A model generated the notes under the pieces. It worked only from the letters and a program-made list of their open reading frames with translations. It was not told the origin of the DNA and made no database searches. DNA of 64,000 bases, taken from positions 37,271,180 through 37,335,179 of the forward strand of contig NC_068997.1 of assembly GCF_001194135.2 (NCBI RefSeq), given 5' to 3'. This DNA is from Octopus bimaculoides. Taxonomy: Eukaryota. Shown one piece after another: positions 727 through 60,478 of the stretch (its first letter is position 1; each line of letters opens with the position of its first letter). The position numbers and the translations under genes were made by a program.

Positions 727-1133
727 TATATATATATATATTACGGATATGTACTTGCATTGCAAGTGACCTGATCTGAGATCGTGTGCTGGAACGAAAA
801 CAATTGCAGCGTGGAAGAAACACACAAAAACCGTTAGATTCACTTCAACATTTAAATTTAATTTGCCAAAATATTTTCGTCGCTTTGAGACCGCGACCTG
901 TTCACTGACAAATTTCCGTGCTGCATATATATATATATATATATATATANNNNNNNNNNNNNNNNNNNNNNNNNNNNNNNNNNNNNNNNNNNNNNNNNNN
1001 NNNNNNNNNNNNNNNNNNNNNNNNNNNNNNNNNNNNNNNNNNNNNNNNNNNNNNNNNNNNNNNNNNNNNNNNNNNNNNNNNNNNNNNNNNNNNNNNNNNN
1101 NNNNNNNNNNNNNNNNNNNNNNNNNNNNNNNNN

Positions 1134-11401: not shown

Positions 11402-11855
11402 CGTGTGCGTGTGTGTGTACACGTGTGTGTGTACGTGTGTGCATGTGCGTGAGAGAGAGGGAGAGAGAGAGAGACTGAGTGAGGGAGTGAGTGAAGGTAT
11501 GTGCTGTCATATATGTATTTTTTGCATGTATATGTAAGTGGCATTCACTCGGTCTCTCTCTGTCTCTCACACATACACGTTATCTTTCATATACACGTAC
11601 ATAAATATATATGCATACGTCTTTTTTGCATATATGTGTGNNNNNNNNNNNNNNNNNNNNNNNNNNNNNNNNNNNNNNNNNNNNNNNNNNNNNNNNNNNN
11701 NNNNNNNNNNNNNNNNNNNNNNNNNNNNNNNNNNNNNNNNNNNNNNNNNNNNNNNNNNNNNNNNNNNNNNNNNNNNNNNNNNNNNNNNNNNNNNNNNNNN
11801 NNNNNNNNNNNNNNNNNNNNNNNNNNNNNNNNNNNNNNNNNNNNNNNNNNNNNNN

Positions 11856-18689: not shown

Positions 18690-18972
18690 TATCATCATCA
18701 TCATCATCATCATCATCATCGTTTAACGTCCGCCTTCCATGCTAGCATGGGTTGGACGATTTGACTGAGGACTGGTGAAACCGGATGGCAACACTAGGCT
18801 CCAATCTAATTTGGCAGAGTTTCTACAGCTGGATGCCCTTCCTAACGCCAACCATTCAGAGAGTGTAGTGGGTGCTTTTACGCATCACCCGCATGAAGGC
18901 CAGTCAGGCGGCACCGGCAACGGCCACGCTCGAAATGGTGTCTTTTATGTGCCACCTGCACAAAAGCCAGTC
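18690..18972 (-). mobile_element. RTE 3' tail or RTE-tail SINE ending in (GAT)n
   Basis: Reverse-complement homolog of the 18500-18668 tail, with a (CAT)n run on the + strand. Confidence 0.8.
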
Positions 18973-19001
18973 CACACACACACACACACACACATATATA
19001 C

Positions 19002-19157
19002 ATATATGATAGGCTTCTTTCAGTTTCTCTCCCAAACCCACTCATGTGCCTTCAGTTGGCCTGAGGCTGTAGTAGAAGACACTTGACCAAGGTGCCATGC
19101 AGTGGAACTGAACCCGGAACCATGTGGTTGGAAAGCAAGCTTCTTACCACACTGCCA
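19002..19157 (-). mobile_element. tRNA/CORE-like SINE head fragment
   Basis: Homologous to the heads at 24550-24708 and 40308-40460. Confidence 0.75.
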
Positions 19158-22700: not shown

Positions 22701-24301
22701 AGTGACTACCAGTAAGGCACTACTAAAGCCAGAATTATGGAAGATTTCACTTGTGCCTCGCACCAGTGGGCCCTTGTCTTTGAAATATTTTGTGAAAACA
22801 GTGTTATCATGGTCAGTATCAGCAAAGCAATTAAGCATTTATAAGTGAATCTTCTGGCAAAACTGTCCCCCTCTGGGCTCTGTCTAGCTCTTTTCTCTTG
22901 GATTGATGGCTTCCTATGTGAACAAAACACTTTCTGCCCCACTTTATCATGTTTTTGACAAGGAAACTTTGAATGAACAGTGCATCTCACAATAAACACA
23001 TGAGCTGATTAGGGAAATGTTTTATGGTCAGTTGACTGGCTAAATATAATAAACTAATCTCCGTCAAGTAAATACCTACTATATTAAATAAACAAAAGAT
23101 ACTTTAGACAATGTAGTCCTAGATATACTAAAAGAACATCTTTGATTATAGATCAACTAAAAGCTAACTTGTGGTTAAACAACAACAACGTCAACATAAA
23201 TACATGACCATGGAAAGCAGGCAGAACCAATGATTGTTTTGTTCAGCCAATTGTATCATATGTCAACAACAACAATAATAATAACAATTTCAAGAGTAGC
23301 ACAACATCATATAAAGCTTCTATTGATATATACTATTTCAACAATTGCACCTTCTTTCTCTCACCTTATATCAAAACTATATATTTTTATAATAATTAAA
23401 TAAGATATTTTGAAAAAGTGGTATCTGAGTGATTAAGAAGTTTGCTTTCTAAACATGTGGTTCTGAGTTCAATTCTATTGAGGAGCACCTTTAGCAAGTG
23501 TCGTCTATAGTACCAGGCTGACCAAAACCTTTTGAGTAGATTTTGTAGACAGGAACTGAACGAAGTTCATTGTACAAATGTGTTTGTGCTGGCTGTAAAC
23601 AAGCATTACACTCATAAAAGTAATGCTGTTTGTGAAAAATGTGAAGAATCTTGTGAAAAATGTGTCTGGCCATGGGGAAATATGACCTTGTTTGGAAACA
23701 AGTGAGGGTTGGTGATAGGAAGGACATCTGGCCATAGAACATGTTTCTACACATTCTGTCAAATCCATGAAGGCATGAAAAAGTGAATGCTAAAACGAGG
23801 GTTTATTTCCATTACACTCACTTTCACTTTAGATAATAGTTAATAATTGATAAGAGTTTTAGTGGTCTGTGTAATTTGTTGAATTATTTTAGACCTGAGA
23901 TGCTGCAGTAAAATCTATACAGGTCTTATTTTCAGTCTTTTCTTTTCTTTCTCTAAATTTTGATGGTCAGACTTCTGCAGAAATTATATGAATCTCACAG
24001 CTTCCAATTTATTTTCCTTTGGAATTCTAAAAGTTTTCTGAAAATTATTAATTTTCATTAACAACTTTCAAATGTTTTTTTTAGTTCAATATTCACTTTC
24101 AGAATGGTTTTATGCATTTTCCTACAAACTTTCATTTGGGTGAAATTTCCCTGGATTGGAGGGATCACAGCCATAATTTCACTCGTGAAAACCATGCAGG
24201 CTGGTTTCTTTGTATTGTCATCAGATTCTGATCCTCTAGATTGCTTTCTTCCCACCTCTTGTAGTAGGCTGGTGGCTGCCATGAACAAAGTTATGGATAT
24301 T

Positions 24302-24708
24302 ACTCTTTTACTCTTTTACTTGTTTCAGTCAAATGACTGTGGCCATGTTGGAGCACCACCTTTAGTCGAGCAAATCGACCCTAGGACTTATTCTTTGTAA
24401 GCCTGGTACTTATTCTATCGGTCTCTTTTGCCAAACCGCTAAGTTACGGTGACGTAAACACACCAACATCGGGTGGGGGGGGGACAAACACAGACACACA
24501 AACATATACACACACATACATATATATATATATATACATATATATGAATGGCTTCTTTCAGTTTCCGTTTACCAAATCCACTCACATGGCTTTGGTTGGC
24601 CCGAGGCTATAGTAGAAGACACTTACTCAAGGTGCCACACAGTGGGACTGAACCCAGAACCATGTGGCTGGTAAGCAAGCTACTTAACACACAGCCACTC
24701 CTGCACCT
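24302..24708 (-). mobile_element. Full-length tRNA/CORE-like SINE
   Basis: Head GGTGCAGGAGTGGCTGTG...GGGTTCAGTCCC, CORE-like TTGAGTAAGTGTCTT, an internal TA/TG microsatellite and a GTAAAAGA-repeat tail. Confidence 0.88.
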
Positions 24709-24721
24709 ATAGGATGGAGAG

Positions 24722-24840
24722 ACGTTTACAGCACCTAGGCTTCCCAAGCGGTCACCCATCTAAGTACTAACTAGGCTCGACGTTGCTTAACTTTGGTGAT
24801 CAGATGAGAACCGATGTTTTCAAAGTGATATGGCCGTAAA
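24722..24840 (-). pseudogene. 5S rRNA pseudogene, essentially full length
   Basis: The reverse complement reads TTTACGGCCATATCACTTTGAAAACATCGGTTCTCATCTGATCACCAAAGTTAAGCAACGTCGAGCCTAGTTAGTACTTAGATGGGTGACCGCTTGGGAAGCCTAGGTGCTGTAAAC. It aligns end to end with metazoan 5S. Several differences are CpG-type transitions and no oligo-T terminator follows. Confidence 0.93.
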
Positions 24841-26429
24841 ATATTGTGCACTCTGCCATAATATCTTTTTCATTATCACAGGATGAACTGCCATTTGGTG
24901 GTGAAATTTTCTATAATCTCATTTTTAGTGAATCCATGTTTGACAACTTGAATTTGACTATGGCTGCTAGCACTTGATAGTATTCCAATGGACTTTGGAT
25001 TAGCTGGTAGGATACATTTGAGGAGGCTTTAGTGTGATACAATCATGTTACTGACAGTGTGTAGTTTTTCCCTTTGCCTTCTTTATGATGTGGCCGATAC
25101 TCTGTTGAGTATCCTGGAACTCACTCTTTTCATCAATGTACTCATTGGTAGTAGATATGTTATCAATTCTTTGGCAATGATGGACCAAAAGATTTTTCCT
25201 TTGACATTTAACAAAGAGATCTCTAGAAACTGGTCAAGTCCTGTTGAGTTTTCTCATTTAAGAAGATAATTCCTTCGGACGTGTCCAGAGCTGGGGTACC
25301 TGTTTCTGTTTCTAGATCATTCATAAAAGTTTTGATAACCTCTTCAGCAGCAGTGGGTAATCTTCCATCTAAATTCTAATTCCTTTTCATTTTGCACATT
25401 TTCGCTTTCATTCGACCTAGTGTTGTTTCCTATAATTATTCTAATTATAGTTTTATCTTTTTTATATATAACAAGCATTTAAGCATAGCTCCTGTATCTA
25501 ATTACAACATTTCTTTTACCCTTCTTAATTAAATGAGCTTTCCATCACTGTAATTATAACCATTTTGTCTTGTGAGAAGCTTGATAATGTAAGCCTTAAT
25601 TTTTGTAGTGACTACTCTTTTACTGCTCTGTTTCTCTCTTTCTCTACTACCATTCTTTTGCAACTTTGTAATTCATAACAATAGGGTTGTAGTTCTTCTC
25701 ATTATGTTTACTCTCCCTCATTTCCCTGTCTAGAATTATTGCTCACTCTGTTTTTTATTCTCCTTCAGTTATAGGAGCCACTTTAAGCCCTTAACTTTGC
25801 AAGTTACAAGGTAATCTTCACTAGCGCTGGTGCCTCAAAAGACAAGTACTCAATTCATCCTATAAAGTGTTTGGCACTGGGAGCAGCATACTAAAGACAT
25901 TCAAGCATGACACAGTCCTCTAACTTGTCAAACTCTGTTACACCATTTGGCCCATGCCTACATAGGAGCTAGATCTTAAATGACTGGAAATTTTAATAGA
26001 AACTTGTGCAATTGGTAATGTCTTATGATTTTATAAATCAAATATCTTACCTATTTCAATGGAAAATAACTGATGAATGAAACCTCTTAGGCAAGATACC
26101 AAAGCTGAGATTCTTCAAGTTCTCTAACCTTGTCCAACACAAGCTTAGTTCAGTTATACATAAATTAAAAATCTGAATTGAAGTTTGCTGTTCTCTGATA
26201 GGACTAAAAATTTATATAGGGTAGAAAATGAGATATATAAATGACTATTAAAAAATATTATCACACAGAGTAACAGAAGGTAGTTCTAGGCACCAATGAT
26301 AAGATAGAGATTTTAATTAGGAAGAATGTCTTTACCAACCACAAATGTTATTTGATAAACCCCACTAAATCAGAGATAGTTTAGTGAACTAATATTTGCT
26401 AAGGAAGATTAACAATGAAAGCTTCCATC

Positions 26430-36706: not shown

Positions 36707-36719
36707 ATANNNNNNNNNN

Positions 36720-37013: not shown

Positions 37014-37179
37014 GTCTGTTTCCTAAAGAGAGAAGAGGGAGAATCATCATCATCATCATCGTCGTTTAACGTCTGCTTTCCATGCTAGCATAATAGATAT
37101 ATATATATATATATATATANNNNNNNNNNNNNNNNNNNNNNNNNNNNNNNNNNNNNNNNNNNNNNNNNNNNNNNNNNNN

Positions 37180-39850: not shown

Positions 39851-40307
39851 CACCTCTTTGACAGCAGAGTACAACATCTGTTAGGGGCTAATGCTTTTTA
39901 AATATATCTAACTTATGATTATGGAAACATTAATGTCAAAATTGCAGTAACTCTAATTATTAGGTTATGGTACAAAAAATTAATTCCTTATATAGAATTA
40001 CCTTGTTATCTTTCCCTTACCAAATTGGCTGATATTAAAATTTTTCAAGAACAAGGATATCCAGTTAAAAACTACTGGCACATCAAAATTTTATGTTCAG
40101 GATGTTCAAATTCTACCAGAATCTGACATTAAAACTGCATTAGAGTTAATGTGACCACATGGTCAAATAATGGGAAAAGAAATTAGGATTCAAACTAAGC
40201 AAATTATTATTGATAATTTTTTTAAAAAATCAGATGAATATAAAATAAAATAAATGTAACTCATTGGATTAAAAAAAGTTTCCTTTGATTATGTATCAGG
40301 TGCAGGC

Positions 40308-40715
40308 ATGGCTGTGTTCTAAGAAGTTTGCTTCCCAACCACATGGTTCTGGATTCAGTTCTACTTTATGGCACCTTGGGAAAGTGTCTTCCACTATGCC
40401 CTTGGGCCAACTGAAGCCATGTGAGTGGATTTGGTAGATAGAAACTGAAAAAAGCCCATTGTATATGTGTGTGTGTGTGCATGCATGCATATGTGTGTGT
40501 GCACGCATGTGTGTGCATGCATGTGTGTGTTGTGTGTGTGTGTGTGTGTATCTGCATGCGCATGCACACGTGTGTGAGTGTATGTGTGTGTCTGTGTGTA
40601 CCAGGCTTAAATTAAAAATAAGGATTGGTGTCAATTTGTTTACCCCAGTCCTTGTTTCTTTGAAGCAGAGCCCCACTGTGGCAACAGTCTGATAACTGAA
40701 ACAAGTAAAAGAAAG
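40308..40715 (+). mobile_element. tRNA/CORE-like SINE with an internal (TG)n
   Basis: Same family as 24302-24708. Confidence 0.82.
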
Positions 40716-52281: not shown

Positions 52282-54605
52282 NNNNNNNNNNNNNNNNNNN
52301 NNNNNNNNNNNNNNNNNNNNNNNNNNNNNNNNNNNNNNNNNNNNNNNNNNNNNNNNNNNNNNNNNNNNNNNNNNNNNNNNNCATGTTACTGTACAATAAA
52401 TAAGAATAAAAGCATTTAAAATCATATTAAAGTATGTACTGTAAATGTTAAGATACACATCATAAAATAGTGTAGCTTAGTAAACAAAATCATGAAACCA
52501 GCTGTGTTGTATTATTTATTGGTCTTTCAAAGCTCATATTGCACTGTAGTTTCAATATTTACTGTTAGGTGTCGTTGTGATGCCTGTGATTGTTTTGAAT
52601 TCAGATTTCTTTACATCTCTTTATCTGCTACTTTCTCATTCTCATTTATTTGTGACTTTATTTTATGTCCTCATGGCTCCTAAGAAAATTCATAGTGAAA
52701 GTGCTAAGAGTCATGCTATAATGCTCGAAGACAAACTGGCTGTGATAAAATGCCATGAAAAAGGTGAAAAAAGTGGTAGTAATTGCATGATCTTTTGGGA
52801 TGAGTTGGACAATTGTATTGACGATTGTAAATAATATGGACAAAATTTTAGCACATATCAAATCTGAAGCCTAAGGGATGAAGAATACTGTCATCAATAA
52901 GAATAGAGGTAAAATCTTTGAAGAAATGGAAAGTCTTCTTTCTCTTTAGATTGTTAGGTTGAATCGTCAGCATGCTACTATTAGTCAAGAAATCATTCAA
53001 GAGAAAGTGTTGTCTTTGGAAGCCTGAAGAAAAAATATCCAGATGAGAAAGATGTAGAGTTCAAGGCAAGTCAAGGATGGTTCATTAGATTTAAGGAGCG
53101 AAGAAGTTATCACTCCATTAAGAAGCAAAGTGAAAGTGCATCAGCTGATGAATAAGCAGCAGCAGAATTTCCTAATGCATTAAAGAAAATCATTAAAAAA
53201 AAAACAGGTTTCTTCTCAAACAGAGTTTTAACATAGATGAAACTGGATTGTACTGGAAAAAAATTGCTCAACCGTTCATACATTTCCAAGGAGGAGAAAA
53301 CTATTCCCAGGCTACAAGGTCTCAAAAGAACGTGTGACAATTATGCTGGGAGGTAATTGTGCAGGAGATTTCAAGTTAATGCCATTGCTTGTGTATCATG
53401 CACACAACTCCCGTGCCCAGAAGAACACACCCAAGGCATCTCTCCCTGTTATTTGGATGGCTAATTCAAAAGCATGGGTTACTGTTGTTGTTTTTGAAGA
53501 TTGGTTCTTCAATCATTTTATCCCAGTAGTAGAGAAGTACTGTAAGGAGAAGGGAATTACTTTTAAGGTTTTACTTATCTTAGATAATGCTCCTGGCCAC
53601 CTGCAAAATATCATAAATTTTGACCCCAACATTACCGTTGTATACCTCCCTCTGAACATAGCGTCTCTCCTGCAGCCAGTGGATCAGGGAATAATTGCTA
53701 TCTTCATGCGTTACTATATGAAGCATATGTTGCAGCAAGCAACAGCTGCAACTGATCTTGATGAGTTCATCACACTTTGTGACTTTTGGAAGAGATATGA
53801 TATCTACAAGGCTAGAACATAACAGCAGCATGGAATGATGTACAGAGTATGGCTATGAATGGTGTATGGAGGATGCTTTGCCCATGTTTCATGAATGATT
53901 TTAAGGGTTTTGGTAATGTTGCCACCAACAAAATGTTTGTGCCTATGAGCAAAGAACTGGAAATGGATTTACAGGATTTATTTGAAAAAGACAAGCAGCC
54001 CCCGATGAAAAAGGATTTGAGAGAGTTTCACAAGCAGCAAAATAAAGAAGAGGAAGTCATGTCACTTTACCATTAAGAAAATGCAGCAAGCATTTGCATA
54101 TATGAAAAAGGTATTTCTAAGTTTGAGGATATGGATCCAAATGCTCAATGCTTTTCCAAGATTATGGAAGGTTTTGCTCCTTATAATATAATCCTTGAGG
54201 AAAAGAAGACAGTTCAAGGAACTCTCAACCAGTTTTTTAAGTGCATCGAACAACAAAAACAACCAGAATCAGCTGTTGATGTTAACAATCCACAGCTTCT
54301 ACATCTGCAATGTAAACCACTAAATTGTATGTACATATTGGTAAATTTAAAATAATTTAGATTTTTTTTTACTATTGTAAAATGATAATAATTACTGAAT
54401 TTGTTTTTTAAGCTTAATAAAGGCTTTTATTTTACCATGTCTTATCGCAAACCGCATTCATAAATAAAGCATCTGCAATGTATAGTAAACACTGCCAAAT
54501 TGTATTCGTAAATTTAGATTATTTGTTTTTTACTGTATTAAAAAATAAAAATAATTCGTAAGCTTAAAATAGGATTTTATTAACCCTGTATTATTGAGAA
54601 TGCAT

Positions 54606-57939: not shown

Positions 57940-58415
57940 ATATATATATATATAATATATATATATATCAATATANNNNNNNNNNNNNNNNNNNNNNNNN
58001 NNNNNNNNNNNNNNNNNNNNNNNNNNNNNNNNNNNNNNNNNNNNNNNNNNNNNNNNNNNNNNNNNNNNNNNNNNNNNNNNNNNNNNNNNNNNNNNNNNNN
58101 NNNNNNNNNNNNNNNNNNNNNNNNNNNNNNNNNNNNNNNNNNNNNNNNNNNNNNNNNNNNNNNNNNNNNNNNNNNNNNNNNNNNNNNNNNNNNNNNNNNN
58201 NNNNNNNNNNNNNNNNNNNNNNNNNNNNNNNNNNNNNNNNNNNNNNNNNNNNNNNNNNNNNNNNNNNNNNNNNNNNNNNNNNNNNNNNNNNNNNNNNNNN
58301 NNNNNNNNNNNNNNNNNNNNNNNNNNNNNNNNNNNNNNNNNNNNNNNNNNNNNNNNNNNNNNNNNNNNNNNNNNNNNNNNNNNNNNNNNNNNNNNNNNNN
58401 NNNNNNNNNNNNNNN

Positions 58416-59898: not shown

Positions 59899-60478
59899 TG
59901 TAATATAATTTTAATCTTCGGATTTTTTTAATATGCTAGACCACTGGTTTTAATTGATTAATATCAATTTCTACCCTTATTAATAAATTTTATATATATA
60001 TATATATATATTCATGCGGGTGACACGTAAANNNNNNNNNNNNNNNNNNNNNNNNNNNNNNNNNNNNNNNNNNNNNNNNNNNNNNNNNNNNNNNNNNNNN
60101 NNNNNNNNNNNNNNNNNNNNNNNNNNNNNNNNNNNNNNNNNNNNNNNNNNNNNNNNNNNNNNNNNNNNNNNNNNNNNNNNNNNNNNNNNNNNNNNNNNNN
60201 NNNNNNNNNNNNNNNNNNNNNNNNNNNNNNNNNNNNNNNNNNNNNNNNNNNNNNNNNNNNNNNNNNNNNNNNNNNNNNNNNNNNNNNNNNNNNNNNNNNN
60301 NNNNNNNNNNNNNNNNNNNNNNNNNNNNNNNNNNNNNNNNNNNNNNNNNNNNNNNNNNNNNNNNNNNNNNNNNNNNNNNNNNNNNNNNNNNNNNNNNNNN
60401 NNNNNNNNNNNNNNNNNNNNNNNNNNNNNNNNNNNNNNNNNNNNNNNNNNNNNNNNNNNNNNNNNNNNNNNNNNNNNN

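What the first reader, a model, noticed from the sequence alone, without database searches (positions are those of the whole stretch)
24297..24845. 5S rRNA pseudogene and a full tRNA-SINE inserted as one unit, with a shared ATATT target duplication
On the minus strand the order is ATATT-bounded junction, near-full-length 5S (24840-24722), a spacer of about 13 nt, a complete tRNA/CORE-like SINE (24708-24302) with its tail, then ATATT again (direct repeats at 24297-24301 and 24841-24845). Removing the insert and one ATATT restores an in-frame RT segment, gag tgc aca ata tcc ata act ttg ttc (ECTISITLF), in the surrounding HERO-like LINE. This strongly suggests one retrotransposition event of a 5S-SINE chimera. 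Possible origins are a template switch like the U6-L1 chimeras, read-through from a terminator-less 5S, or a composite 5S-headed SINE family. I do not know of such a family in cephalopods, but cannot confirm that it is undescribed.
Basis: partly seen in the sequence, partly recalled or inferred. Interest (0 to 1): 0.75.

Follow-up and report, generated by a model that had tools for sequence, protein, structure and literature searches.

The report
5S rRNA–SINE chimera, one insertion
A decayed 5S ribosomal RNA copy and a complete, very abundant SINE entered this cephalopod locus together as a single retrotransposed unit, because two related species have the same site empty with only one ATATT; the fused unit occurs at only about three places per genome, so it is a neat small example of a known kind of event, not a new repeat family.

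Summary
Rfam finds a full-length 5S rRNA on the minus strand at 24723-24841 (101 bits). It is followed by a 15-nt spacer and a complete SINE (24707-24302). ATATT flanks the whole unit at 24297-24301 and 24841-24845.

The decisive evidence is an orthologous empty site. In contigs of two related species (coded B and D), the right flank runs straight into the left flank across a single ATATT, and all 539 bp are absent. A closer species (C) has the filled site. So this was one insertion with a 5-bp target duplication.

The fusion was not made at this insertion. About two or three other loci per genome carry the same 5S-spacer-SINE junction, including in B and D, which lack this copy. Their upstream flanks differ from 5S position 1 onwards.

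The spacer is the native 5S 3' trailer (ATCTCACAC plus a T-run). One older copy keeps T5. The window copy has no run of four or more Ts.

Best reading: a Pol III transcript started at 5S +1 of an older composite locus, read through a lost terminator into the SINE, and was copied through the SINE tail.

It is a low-copy composite, compared with roughly 10^5 solo SINEs. It resembles the postulated first stage of 5S-headed SINEs such as AmnSINE1 and HaSE3. The "HERO-like RT" label for the flanks could not be confirmed.

The parts
24841..24845 (-). Upstream copy of the 5-bp target-site duplication (ATATT on the plus strand, AATAT on the minus strand). Base 24841 is also where Rfam places 5S position 1: it is T here and G in genomic 5S genes.
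   Evidence: Sequence. The orthologous empty site in organisms B and D has a single ATATT.
24723..24840 (-). 5S rRNA retro-pseudogene, essentially full length (positions 2-120, or 1-120 with G1>T). It has at least 9 differences from the majority genomic 5S letters.
   Evidence: Rfam RF00001 at 101.4 bits, model 1-120. Majority-letter comparison.
24708..24722 (-). Spacer TCTCTCCATCCTATA. It is a degenerate form of the native 5S 3' trailer plus oligo-T terminator (genomic 5S loci read ATC(T/A)CAC(A)+T5-8). It contains no run of four or more Ts.
   Evidence: 3'-flank consensus of dispersed 5S loci in seven runs from four species. A sister composite copy reads GTCTCACACTTTTTATA+GGTGCAGG. T-run scan.
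24302..24707 (-). Complete copy of the hyper-abundant SINE. Its parts are a head with A- and B-box-like motifs (about 24707-24630), a CORE-like body (about 24630-24553), an internal TA/TG microsatellite and C-run (about 24552-24473), a 3' module (24472-24321) and a (GTAAAAGA)n tail (24320-24302).
   Evidence: Other copies in the window. Depth about 10^5 times the unique flanks, and family ends marked by loose ends at 24709-24711 and 24312.
24297..24301 (-). Downstream copy of the 5-bp target-site duplication (ATATT on the plus strand).
24058..24296 (-). Host sequence 3' of the insertion. It is a decayed open stretch (...SITLFMAATSLLQEV...) that continues the frame broken by the insert. It may be an old LINE RT remnant, but this is unverified.
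   Evidence: No Pfam, homologue or PDB RT hit. Read depth close to single copy.
24846..25273 (-). Host sequence 5' of the insertion, with frameshifted RT-like fragments (...ISLLNVKGKIFWSIIAKELITYLL..., ...DIMAECT). It is orthologous across species A, B, C and D.

Best explanation
The 539 bp at 24302-24840 are one retrocopy of one RNA.

Shown: the RNA began at, or one base after, position 1 of a 5S rRNA gene copy. It ran through the 5S, through its 3' trailer, which no longer carries a usable oligo-T terminator, and through a full-length SINE to the SINE's own (GTAAAAGA)n tail. The cDNA was integrated into an AT-rich site (AATAT) in an old, decayed repeat. Integration produced a 5-bp target-site duplication. 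It happened on the lineage leading to species A and C, after that lineage split from B and D.

Shown: the 5S-trailer-SINE fusion is older than this insertion. It sits at two or three further loci per genome, including in B and D.

Inferred: the template was a Pol III transcript of such an older composite locus. Transcription would have been driven by the internal type 1 promoter of the 5S part and allowed to read through because the T-run had decayed. The reverse transcriptase of the SINE's partner LINE would have recognised the SINE tail.

Undecided: how the very first composite arose. Either a SINE landed just behind a 5S terminator, or the RT switched template from a SINE RNA to an untrimmed 5S primary transcript.

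The composite never amplified, and the copy in the window is now a dead pseudogene.
For: Single event:
- The empty orthologous site in B and D has one ATATT and both flanks contiguous (compared).
- The site is filled in the closer species C, where a 332-nt contig spans 24783-25111 at 96% identity.
- Flank divergence is about 3.5% for A versus C and about 8% for A versus B or D. The presence/absence pattern therefore fits one insertion.

Pre-existing composite:
- Contigs that span SINE head, spacer and 5S, but whose alignment to the window stops at the 5S 5' end and then continues for hundreds of bases with a different flank: X1 544 nt (24689-24837), X4 138 nt (24675-24800), X18 920 nt (24683-24840), X19 962 nt (24658-24840).
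- Summed contig depth across the junction equals two or three unit-depth contigs in A (X1, X2, X9), two in B and three in D.
- Raw reads crossing the junction number 3-13, against about 1,100 over the 5S and about 125,000 over the SINE.

Spacer is the 5S trailer:
- The 3'-flank consensus of dozens of dispersed 5S loci is GCATC(T/A)CAC(A)T5-8 in seven runs from four species.
- One composite copy reads GTCTCACACTTTTTATA|GGTGCAGG.
- The window copy, one other copy in A (2-nt deletion at 24712-24713) and the 920-nt and 962-nt contigs of B and D carry CC at 24712-24713, where that copy has TT.

No terminator:
- The only run of four or more Ts on the sense strand between 24860 and 24200 is at the 5S start itself.

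Solo behaviour of the SINE:
- The copy at 40298 has its own TSD (GTATCAG) and no 5S.
Against: - No read-through transcript was seen. In three RNA-seq runs of species A the window flank has zero depth. The few reads crossing a 5S-spacer junction come from strongly diverged copies with 10-15 mismatches. These are cDNA libraries that are poor in Pol III products, so the test is weak.
- The window copy is 12-15% different from the other composite copies over about 150 nt. That is more than the 7-8% expected if one of them were the direct source after the A/B split. The true source may be unsampled, or CpG decay may inflate the figure.
- Full sequences and 3' flanks of the other copies could not be retrieved, so it is not shown that they are retrocopies with their own TSDs.
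- Type 1 (5S) promoters are thought to depend on upstream sequence and to be weak after retroposition (discussed in PMC3272025).
- The partner LINE was not identified.
Confidence: 0.6

Rival explanations
1. A fresh template-switch chimera made during this very insertion. The LINE reverse transcriptase copied a SINE RNA to its 5' end and then jumped to the 3' end of an untrimmed 5S primary transcript, as in U6-L1 and 5S-L1/Alu chimeric retrogenes. The other junction-sharing loci would then be independent products of the same process.
For: The architecture is exactly that of chimeric retrogenes: a full small Pol III RNA at the 5' end, a retroelement at the 3' end, and one TSD. Template switching to small RNAs, including 5S, is the published explanation for 5S/tRNA composite SINE heads (PMC4824008, PMC4758252, PMC3272025). 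A primary 5S transcript would carry the trailer and U-run, as the T5-type copy does. Dozens of dispersed 5S-plus-trailer copies show that untrimmed 5S RNA does get copied into this genome.
Against: Independent switches should give different junctions. Here several loci share a full-length SINE start, the same ATA between T-run and SINE, and in part the same degenerate T-run (CC at 24712-24713). These loci include some in species that predate this insertion. The window spacer lacks the U-run on which a terminated 5S transcript would end.
Confidence: 0.2
2. Two separate insertions. A SINE inserted first with an AATA-type duplication. Later a 5S retro-pseudogene landed within 3 bp of the SINE's 5' end, or the two arrived in the reverse order.
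For: A weak ATA lies just before the SINE (24710-24708) and within the upstream AATAT. It could be read as a 3-bp duplication for a second event.
Against: It requires a 5S insertion, of which the genome holds only tens, to hit a 3-bp window. No intermediate state exists in any species sampled: A and C are filled, B and D are empty. The same 5S-spacer-SINE junction recurs at other loci. The spacer is 5S trailer rather than host sequence, because the empty site has nothing between ATATT and the left flank.
Confidence: 0.03
3. The insert is ancestral and was precisely deleted between the two ATATT repeats in the ancestor of species B and D.
For: Short direct repeats can mediate precise deletions. 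Only two lineages were sampled on the empty side.
Against: The boundaries coincide exactly with an RNA 5' end (5S position 1-2) and a SINE tail, which is the signature of insertion. Exact excision that leaves one repeat copy is rare. B and D are nearly identical in the flank and represent one lineage, so a single event is needed either way.
Confidence: 0.02
4. The three or so composite loci arose by DNA-level (segmental) duplication. Only the first was RNA-mediated, and the window copy is a duplicated segment.
For: Copy number is very low. The 3' flanks of the other copies are unknown.
Against: The window copy has a TSD and an exact empty site. The other copies stop matching the window exactly at the 5S 5' end (24837-24840) and continue for 390-760 nt with unrelated flanks.
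Confidence: 0.05

Closest known systems
Chimeric retrogenes of small Pol III/snRNA plus a retroelement (U6-L1, 5S rRNA-L1/Alu; Buzdin et al. 2003, as cited in PMC4758252 and PMC3272025; bioRxiv 10.1101/2025.02.02.635956)
   Same: A full-length small RNA forms the 5' part and a retroelement with its tail forms the 3' part. One target-site duplication surrounds both, and integration is LINE-mediated.
   Different: The 3' part is a full-length SINE rather than a 5'-truncated element. A post-5S trailer is included. The identical junction recurs at several loci of different age, which suggests that the fusion itself was copied rather than re-made each time. The host is a cephalopod, not a mammal.
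5S/tRNA composite SINEs: AmnSINE1 and related Deu-SINEs (Nishihara et al. 2006, as described in PMC4758252 and PMC4824008), and HaSE3 of Helicoverpa (PMC3272025)
   Same: A 5S rRNA sequence is fused to the 5' end of a tRNA-derived SINE and shares that SINE's body and tail. The element here corresponds to the postulated initial stage, before loss of part of the tRNA-related region.
   Different: Those are amplified families with trimmed 5S or tRNA parts. Here the 5S is complete (120 nt) with its trailer, the tRNA-SINE is complete, and there are only about three loci per genome. No evidence shows that the 5S promoter drives it.
SINE3 / 5S-derived SINEs (Kapitonov and Jurka 2003; fruit-bat and springhare families, as cited in PMC3272025)
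   Same: A 5S-derived head with box A, IE and C regions lies upstream of a LINE-dependent tail.
   Different: Copy number is orders of magnitude lower, and the element contains a second complete Pol III (type 2) promoter unit.
Octopus tRNA-derived SINEs OK/OR1/OR2 (Ohshima and Okada 1994; one of OR1/OR2 is listed as a CORE-SINE in PMC4824008 and PMC4758252)
   Same: The 3' partner is an extremely abundant SINE with a tRNA-like head and a CORE-like body, as described for octopus.

Membership tests
Chimeric retrogene (small RNA + retroelement, single TSD) | The 5' part is a full-length small Pol III RNA | tested here: met
   Rfam 5S_rRNA, model positions 1-120, 101 bits.
Chimeric retrogene (small RNA + retroelement, single TSD) | One target-site duplication encloses both parts and there is none between them | tested here: met
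   ATATT lies on both sides. The orthologous empty site has one ATATT and nothing else.
Chimeric retrogene (small RNA + retroelement, single TSD) | The junction is created de novo by RT template switching, so each chimera has its own junction | tested here: not met
   The same 5S-trailer-ATA-SINE junction is present at two or three other loci, some older than this insertion. The origin of the first copy remains open.
5S rRNA-headed SINE (SINE3 / AmnSINE1 / HaSE3 type) | A 5S-derived 5' region covering the internal promoter (boxes A, IE, C) | tested here: met
   The whole 5S is present. Promoter activity was not tested.
5S rRNA-headed SINE (SINE3 / AmnSINE1 / HaSE3 type) | A 3' tail shared with a mobilising LINE or an existing SINE | tested here: met
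   The body and tail are those of the abundant SINE. The partner LINE was not identified.
5S rRNA-headed SINE (SINE3 / AmnSINE1 / HaSE3 type) | Amplified to a dispersed multi-copy family | tested here: not met
   About two or three junction-spanning contigs per genome, and 3-13 junction reads against about 125,000 over the SINE.
5S rRNA-headed SINE (SINE3 / AmnSINE1 / HaSE3 type) | Transcribed by Pol III from the 5S head through the body | tested here: inconclusive
   No run of four or more Ts between the 5S and at least 100 nt beyond the element end. No supporting RNA reads in cDNA libraries.
Functional 5S rRNA gene | Sequence of the expressed/array 5S, the array upstream flank, and an oligo-T terminator | tested here: not met
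   At least 9 differences from the majority letters. The upstream flank is host sequence, not the array flank ...CTTCTCTGATG. The T-run is destroyed.
tRNA-derived / CORE SINE of octopus | A tRNA-related head with A and B boxes | tested here: inconclusive
   ARAGORN and Rfam give no tRNA call. Box-like motifs TGGCTGTGTG(T/G)T and GGTTCAGTCCC are visible, and the majority letter at 24687 brings the A box closer to consensus.
tRNA-derived / CORE SINE of octopus | High copy number, with dispersed copies that have their own TSDs | tested here: met
   Depth about 10^5 times the unique flanks. The copy at 40298-40712 has TSD GTATCAG.
HERO-clade LINE (host sequence) | A recognisable reverse-transcriptase domain | tested here: not met
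   No RVT hit in Pfam at E<=1. No homologue at E<=1e-3. No RT in the PDB search. Only motif-level resemblance, such as ISLLNVKGKIF and GCTIS-type motifs.
HERO-clade LINE (host sequence) | A restriction-like endonuclease C-terminal to the RT, and clade placement by phylogeny | not tested
   The remnant is too decayed and no reference set was available.

The most novel reading that the evidence does not exclude
This may be a 5S-headed SINE lineage caught at its birth in octopods. It consists of a complete 5S gene copy whose terminator has decayed, fused to a complete tRNA/CORE SINE. It has existed since before the species split and retrotransposed as a unit at least once afterwards. If that is correct, it would be direct evidence that 5S-tRNA composite SINEs such as AmnSINE1 and HaSE3 can arise by Pol III read-through from a 5S gene into a neighbouring SINE. 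The mechanism usually assumed is RT template switching.
Probability: 0.3. Interest if true: 0.55.

Novelty: new member of a known kind. Interest (0 to 1): 0.38.

Why it matters
5S-headed and 5S/tRNA composite SINEs are known only as finished, amplified families. Their origin has been inferred as a template switch but never observed. This element still has both parents complete and has a datable presence/absence pattern among related species. Its sister copies differ in exactly the feature that should control read-through, the 5S terminator. That makes it a small but concrete test case for how new SINE heads are acquired.

In practice it is also a clean, homoplasy-free insertion marker that groups species A and C against B and D. 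It also warns annotators that 5S hits next to SINEs in cephalopod assemblies can be retro-chimeras rather than genes.

It has no evident function at this locus.

Tried and rejected
- Host LINE identity. I stitched a 225-aa RT-like conceptual protein from three frames. It gave no RVT hit in Pfam, no homologue among 5.8 billion proteins and only a spurious Pescadillo match in the PDB. An RT consensus that I wrote from memory matched 35 aa at 25253-25149. That is a lead, not evidence, so I do not endorse the HERO label.
- tRNA origin of the SINE head. ARAGORN and Rfam at E<=1 give nothing. The weak miRNA and snoRNA hits at 24479-24593 are artefacts of the internal TA/TG microsatellite.
- Other 5S copies in the window: none.
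- 5S upstream of other SINE copies in the window: none.
- Long-read runs to recover whole sister copies: none are served.
- RNA support for a 5S-SINE co-transcript: none convincing.
- The first attempt to see the empty site used a stretch that started exactly at the flank. It failed because overhanging contig ends are not reported there. Adding 18 nt of 5S exposed them.
- The palindrome AGGTTCGTCCATCGATCGATGGACGAACCT next to SINE and 5S 5' ends is absent from the window. I did not resolve it further.
- Two-step insertion, precise deletion and segmental duplication were considered and rejected; see the rival explanations.
Full report
**What is in the sequence**

Read on the minus strand, the window goes through these parts in order:
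- host sequence ...GCAGAGTGCACAATAT;
- a 5S rRNA, from 24841/24840 to 24723;
- the 15-nt spacer TCTCTCCATCCTATA, 24722-24708;
- a complete SINE that starts GGTGCAGGAGTGGCTGTG at 24707 and ends ...AAGTAAAAGAGTAAAAGAGTA at 24302;
- AATAT again, followed by host sequence CCATAACTTTGTTCATGG.

Rfam matches the 5S over all 120 model positions at 101.4 bits, E = 5e-21. It is the only gathering-level RNA hit in the 64 kb. ARAGORN finds no tRNA anywhere in the window.

The SINE has further copies in the window: 40298-40712, 19157-18973, and fragments at 47956-47761, 17237-17144 and 2717-2593. None of them has a 5S upstream. The copy at 40298 has its own duplication, GTATCAG.

**How common each part is**

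I laid about 0.7x of raw genomic reads from two runs of the same species (coded organism A) on 24000-25150. Combined depth over both read orientations was:
- unique flanks: 0-3 reads;
- the 5S: about 1,000-1,200 reads;
- the SINE: about 60,000-130,000 reads.

The SINE is therefore one of the hyper-abundant elements of this genome. 5S-like sequence is present in several hundred copies. Most of these share one upstream flank (sense ...AAAATTTACTTCTCTGATG), which marks the gene array. Dozens more are dispersed unit-depth loci.

**One event or two: the empty site**

Logan contigs of related species settle this.
- In organisms B and D (runs X18, X19, X20) a contig of about 1 kb aligns to the right flank 24841-25150/25250 at about 92% identity.
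- It then continues on the plus strand, upstream of 24841, with TCTCCTTGGCTGCCATGAACAAGGTTACAG.
- The window's left flank is ...GGCTGCCATGAACAAAGTTATGG followed by ATATT. It matches 20 of the 23 bases next to the junction.
- B and D therefore read left flank, one ATATT, right flank. All 539 bp at 24302-24840 and the second ATATT are missing.
- In organism C a 332-nt contig crosses from the flank into the 5S (24783-25111, 96% identity), so C has the insert.

Flank divergence is about 3.5% for A versus C and about 8% for A versus B or D, and B and D are nearly identical to each other. The pattern is one insertion on the A+C stem.

The empty site reads gag tgc aca ata tct gta acc ttg ttc = ECTISVTLF.

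A two-step history would require a 5S retro-pseudogene to land within 3 bp of a SINE 5' end with no intermediate state surviving. It is also contradicted by the next observation.

**The fusion is older than this insertion**

Several contigs span SINE head, spacer and 5S, yet stop matching the window at the 5S 5' end and carry hundreds of bases of unrelated upstream flank:

| Run (species) | Contig length | Window span |
|---|---|---|
| X1 (A) | 544 nt | 24689-24837 |
| X4 (A) | 138 nt | 24675-24800 |
| X18 (B) | 920 nt | 24683-24840 |
| X19 (D) | 962 nt | 24658-24840 |

On a narrow stretch where SINE-only and 5S-only sequences cannot swamp the result (24696-24792), I compared the summed contig depth over the SINE-head side of the junction with the depth of single-copy contigs. 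It corresponds to:
- three contigs in X1 (203 = 71 + 67 + about 65);
- two in X2;
- three in X9;
- two in X18 (species B);
- three in X19 (species D).

Raw reads crossing the junction number 10-13 in X23, many of them duplicates of one copy, and 3-4 in X24.

So there are about three loci per genome. In B and D none of them is the window locus. This is a very small family and not an amplified SINE.

**What the spacer is**

The 3' flanks of the dispersed 5S loci give the same consensus in seven runs from four species: after ...GCTGTAAGC comes ATC(T/A)CAC(A) and then five to eight Ts (tabulated). This is the native 5S trailer and Pol III terminator.

One composite copy in species A can be reconstructed from its listed differences (24712 G>A, 24713 G>A, 24715 T>A, a T inserted after 24716, 24718 A>T). 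It reads GTCTCACACTTTTTATA|GGTGCAGG, which is trailer plus T5, then ATA, then the SINE.

The window copy reads GTCTCTCCATCCTATA|GGTGCAGG. At 24712-24713 it has CC where the T5 copy has TT. That state is shared by another copy in A, which has a 2-nt deletion at those positions, and by the 920-nt and 962-nt contigs of B and D.

On the sense strand the only run of four or more Ts between 24860 and 24200 is at the very start of the 5S. Nothing would stop Pol III between the 5S and the end of the SINE.

**Mechanism**

Shown:
- the element is bounded by an RNA 5' end (5S position 1-2) and a SINE tail;
- it has a TSD and an empty orthologous site;
- the composite existed before this insertion;
- the spacer is 5S trailer without a terminator.

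Inferred: transcription started at 5S +1 of an older composite locus, read through into the SINE, and the SINE tail recruited the partner LINE's reverse transcriptase.

The first composite could have formed in either of two ways. A SINE could have inserted just behind a 5S terminator. Alternatively, the RT could have switched template from a SINE RNA onto an untrimmed 5S primary transcript. The second route is the published explanation for 5S/tRNA composite heads (PMC4824008, PMC4758252, PMC3272025). I cannot decide between them.

Weak points:
- No read-through RNA was seen in three cDNA libraries or in one RNA contig set.
- The window copy differs by 12-15% from the sampled sister copies, so the direct source may not be among them.
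- The sister copies' 3' ends and TSDs could not be retrieved, and no long-read runs were available.

**Host sequence**

The flanks have broken frames with RT-like motifs (ISLLNVKGKIFWSIIAKELITYLL; DIMAECTIS|ITLFMAATSLL). Pfam, the large protein search and the PDB search all fail to recognise an RT. Read depth is close to single copy. "HERO-like" therefore remains an untested label. It does not affect the main conclusion, because the empty site is orthologous rather than paralogous.

**Comparison with known elements, and verdict**

The element has the architecture of chimeric retrogenes: a small Pol III RNA, a retroelement and a single TSD. It also matches the presumed first stage of 5S/tRNA composite SINEs such as AmnSINE1 and HaSE3.

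It fails the independent-junction criterion of chimeric retrogenes and the amplification criterion of composite SINEs. I file it as a new, low-copy member of a known kind of event, in a group (cephalopods) where I found no description of one.

The species names are coded in the tools, so I cannot name them. It is a well-documented, datable example of moderate specialist interest, with no sign of function.

Noticed in passing
reads laid at window 24709 and at 24758-24838 (not in the window itself): A perfect 30-nt palindrome, AGGTTCGTCCATCGATCGATGGACGAACCT, lies directly 5' of the SINE head in about 5% of SINE-head reads. It also lies 5' of 5S copies truncated at several positions. It was seen only in the two 2026 raw-read runs and is absent from the window. 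It may be a head-to-head ligation artefact at a GATC site in that library type, or a real repeated target or 5' extension.
   Followed up: partly
reads/contigs laid at window 24719-24726: At least 50 dispersed, unit-depth 5S loci per genome carry the same 3' trailer ATC(T/A)CAC(A) plus T5-8 before their flanks diverge, in all four species. Untrimmed 5S primary transcripts or orphon genes appear to be widely dispersed in these genomes.
   Followed up: partly
RNA reads laid at window 24804 and 24831: In three RNA-seq runs, 5'-truncated 5S-like sequence is joined to fixed sequences with 0.97-1.0 agreement: CAGGAACTGGTGCATTCAACATGATACGCC and TCTACACAAACCCCTGTTTTCGACTGCAAA. These are expressed transcripts that contain 5S pseudogene fragments.
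   Followed up: no
window 24724-24862 and beyond: A 303-nt contig from an RNA-labelled run of species A matches the window locus with one mismatch at depth 3. The locus may lie in an intron or lncRNA, or the run may contain genomic DNA.
   Followed up: no
window 40298-40712 (+): A solo copy of the same SINE with its own 7-bp duplication GTATCAG. It has a much longer internal TG/CA microsatellite and a diverged 3' module.
   Followed up: partly
window 18760-19157 (-): A 5'-truncated SINE copy (starting at SINE position 12) whose 3' half is replaced, after the microsatellite, by a different GC-rich repeat ending in (ATG)n. It may be a nested or composite element.
   Followed up: no
window 24473-24480 versus family consensus: Most genomic SINE copies carry about 15-20 extra bases (sense ...CCCCCCAACATCGCTTGACAA) between the C-run and CCGATGTTGG. 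The window copy lacks them (loose end at 24472, about 19,500 reads).
   Followed up: no
window 950-1133, 2270-2592, 11641-11855, 36710-36719, 37120-37179, 52282-52381, 57976-58415, 60032-60478: Eight runs of N (assembly gaps) totalling 1,779 bases. Several sit next to TA/TG microsatellites of SINE copies.
   Followed up: no
window 24479-24593 (-): Weak sub-threshold Rfam hits (mir-1277, mir-297, mir-3149, snoRNA) fall on the SINE's internal TA/TG microsatellite and are spurious.
   Followed up: yes
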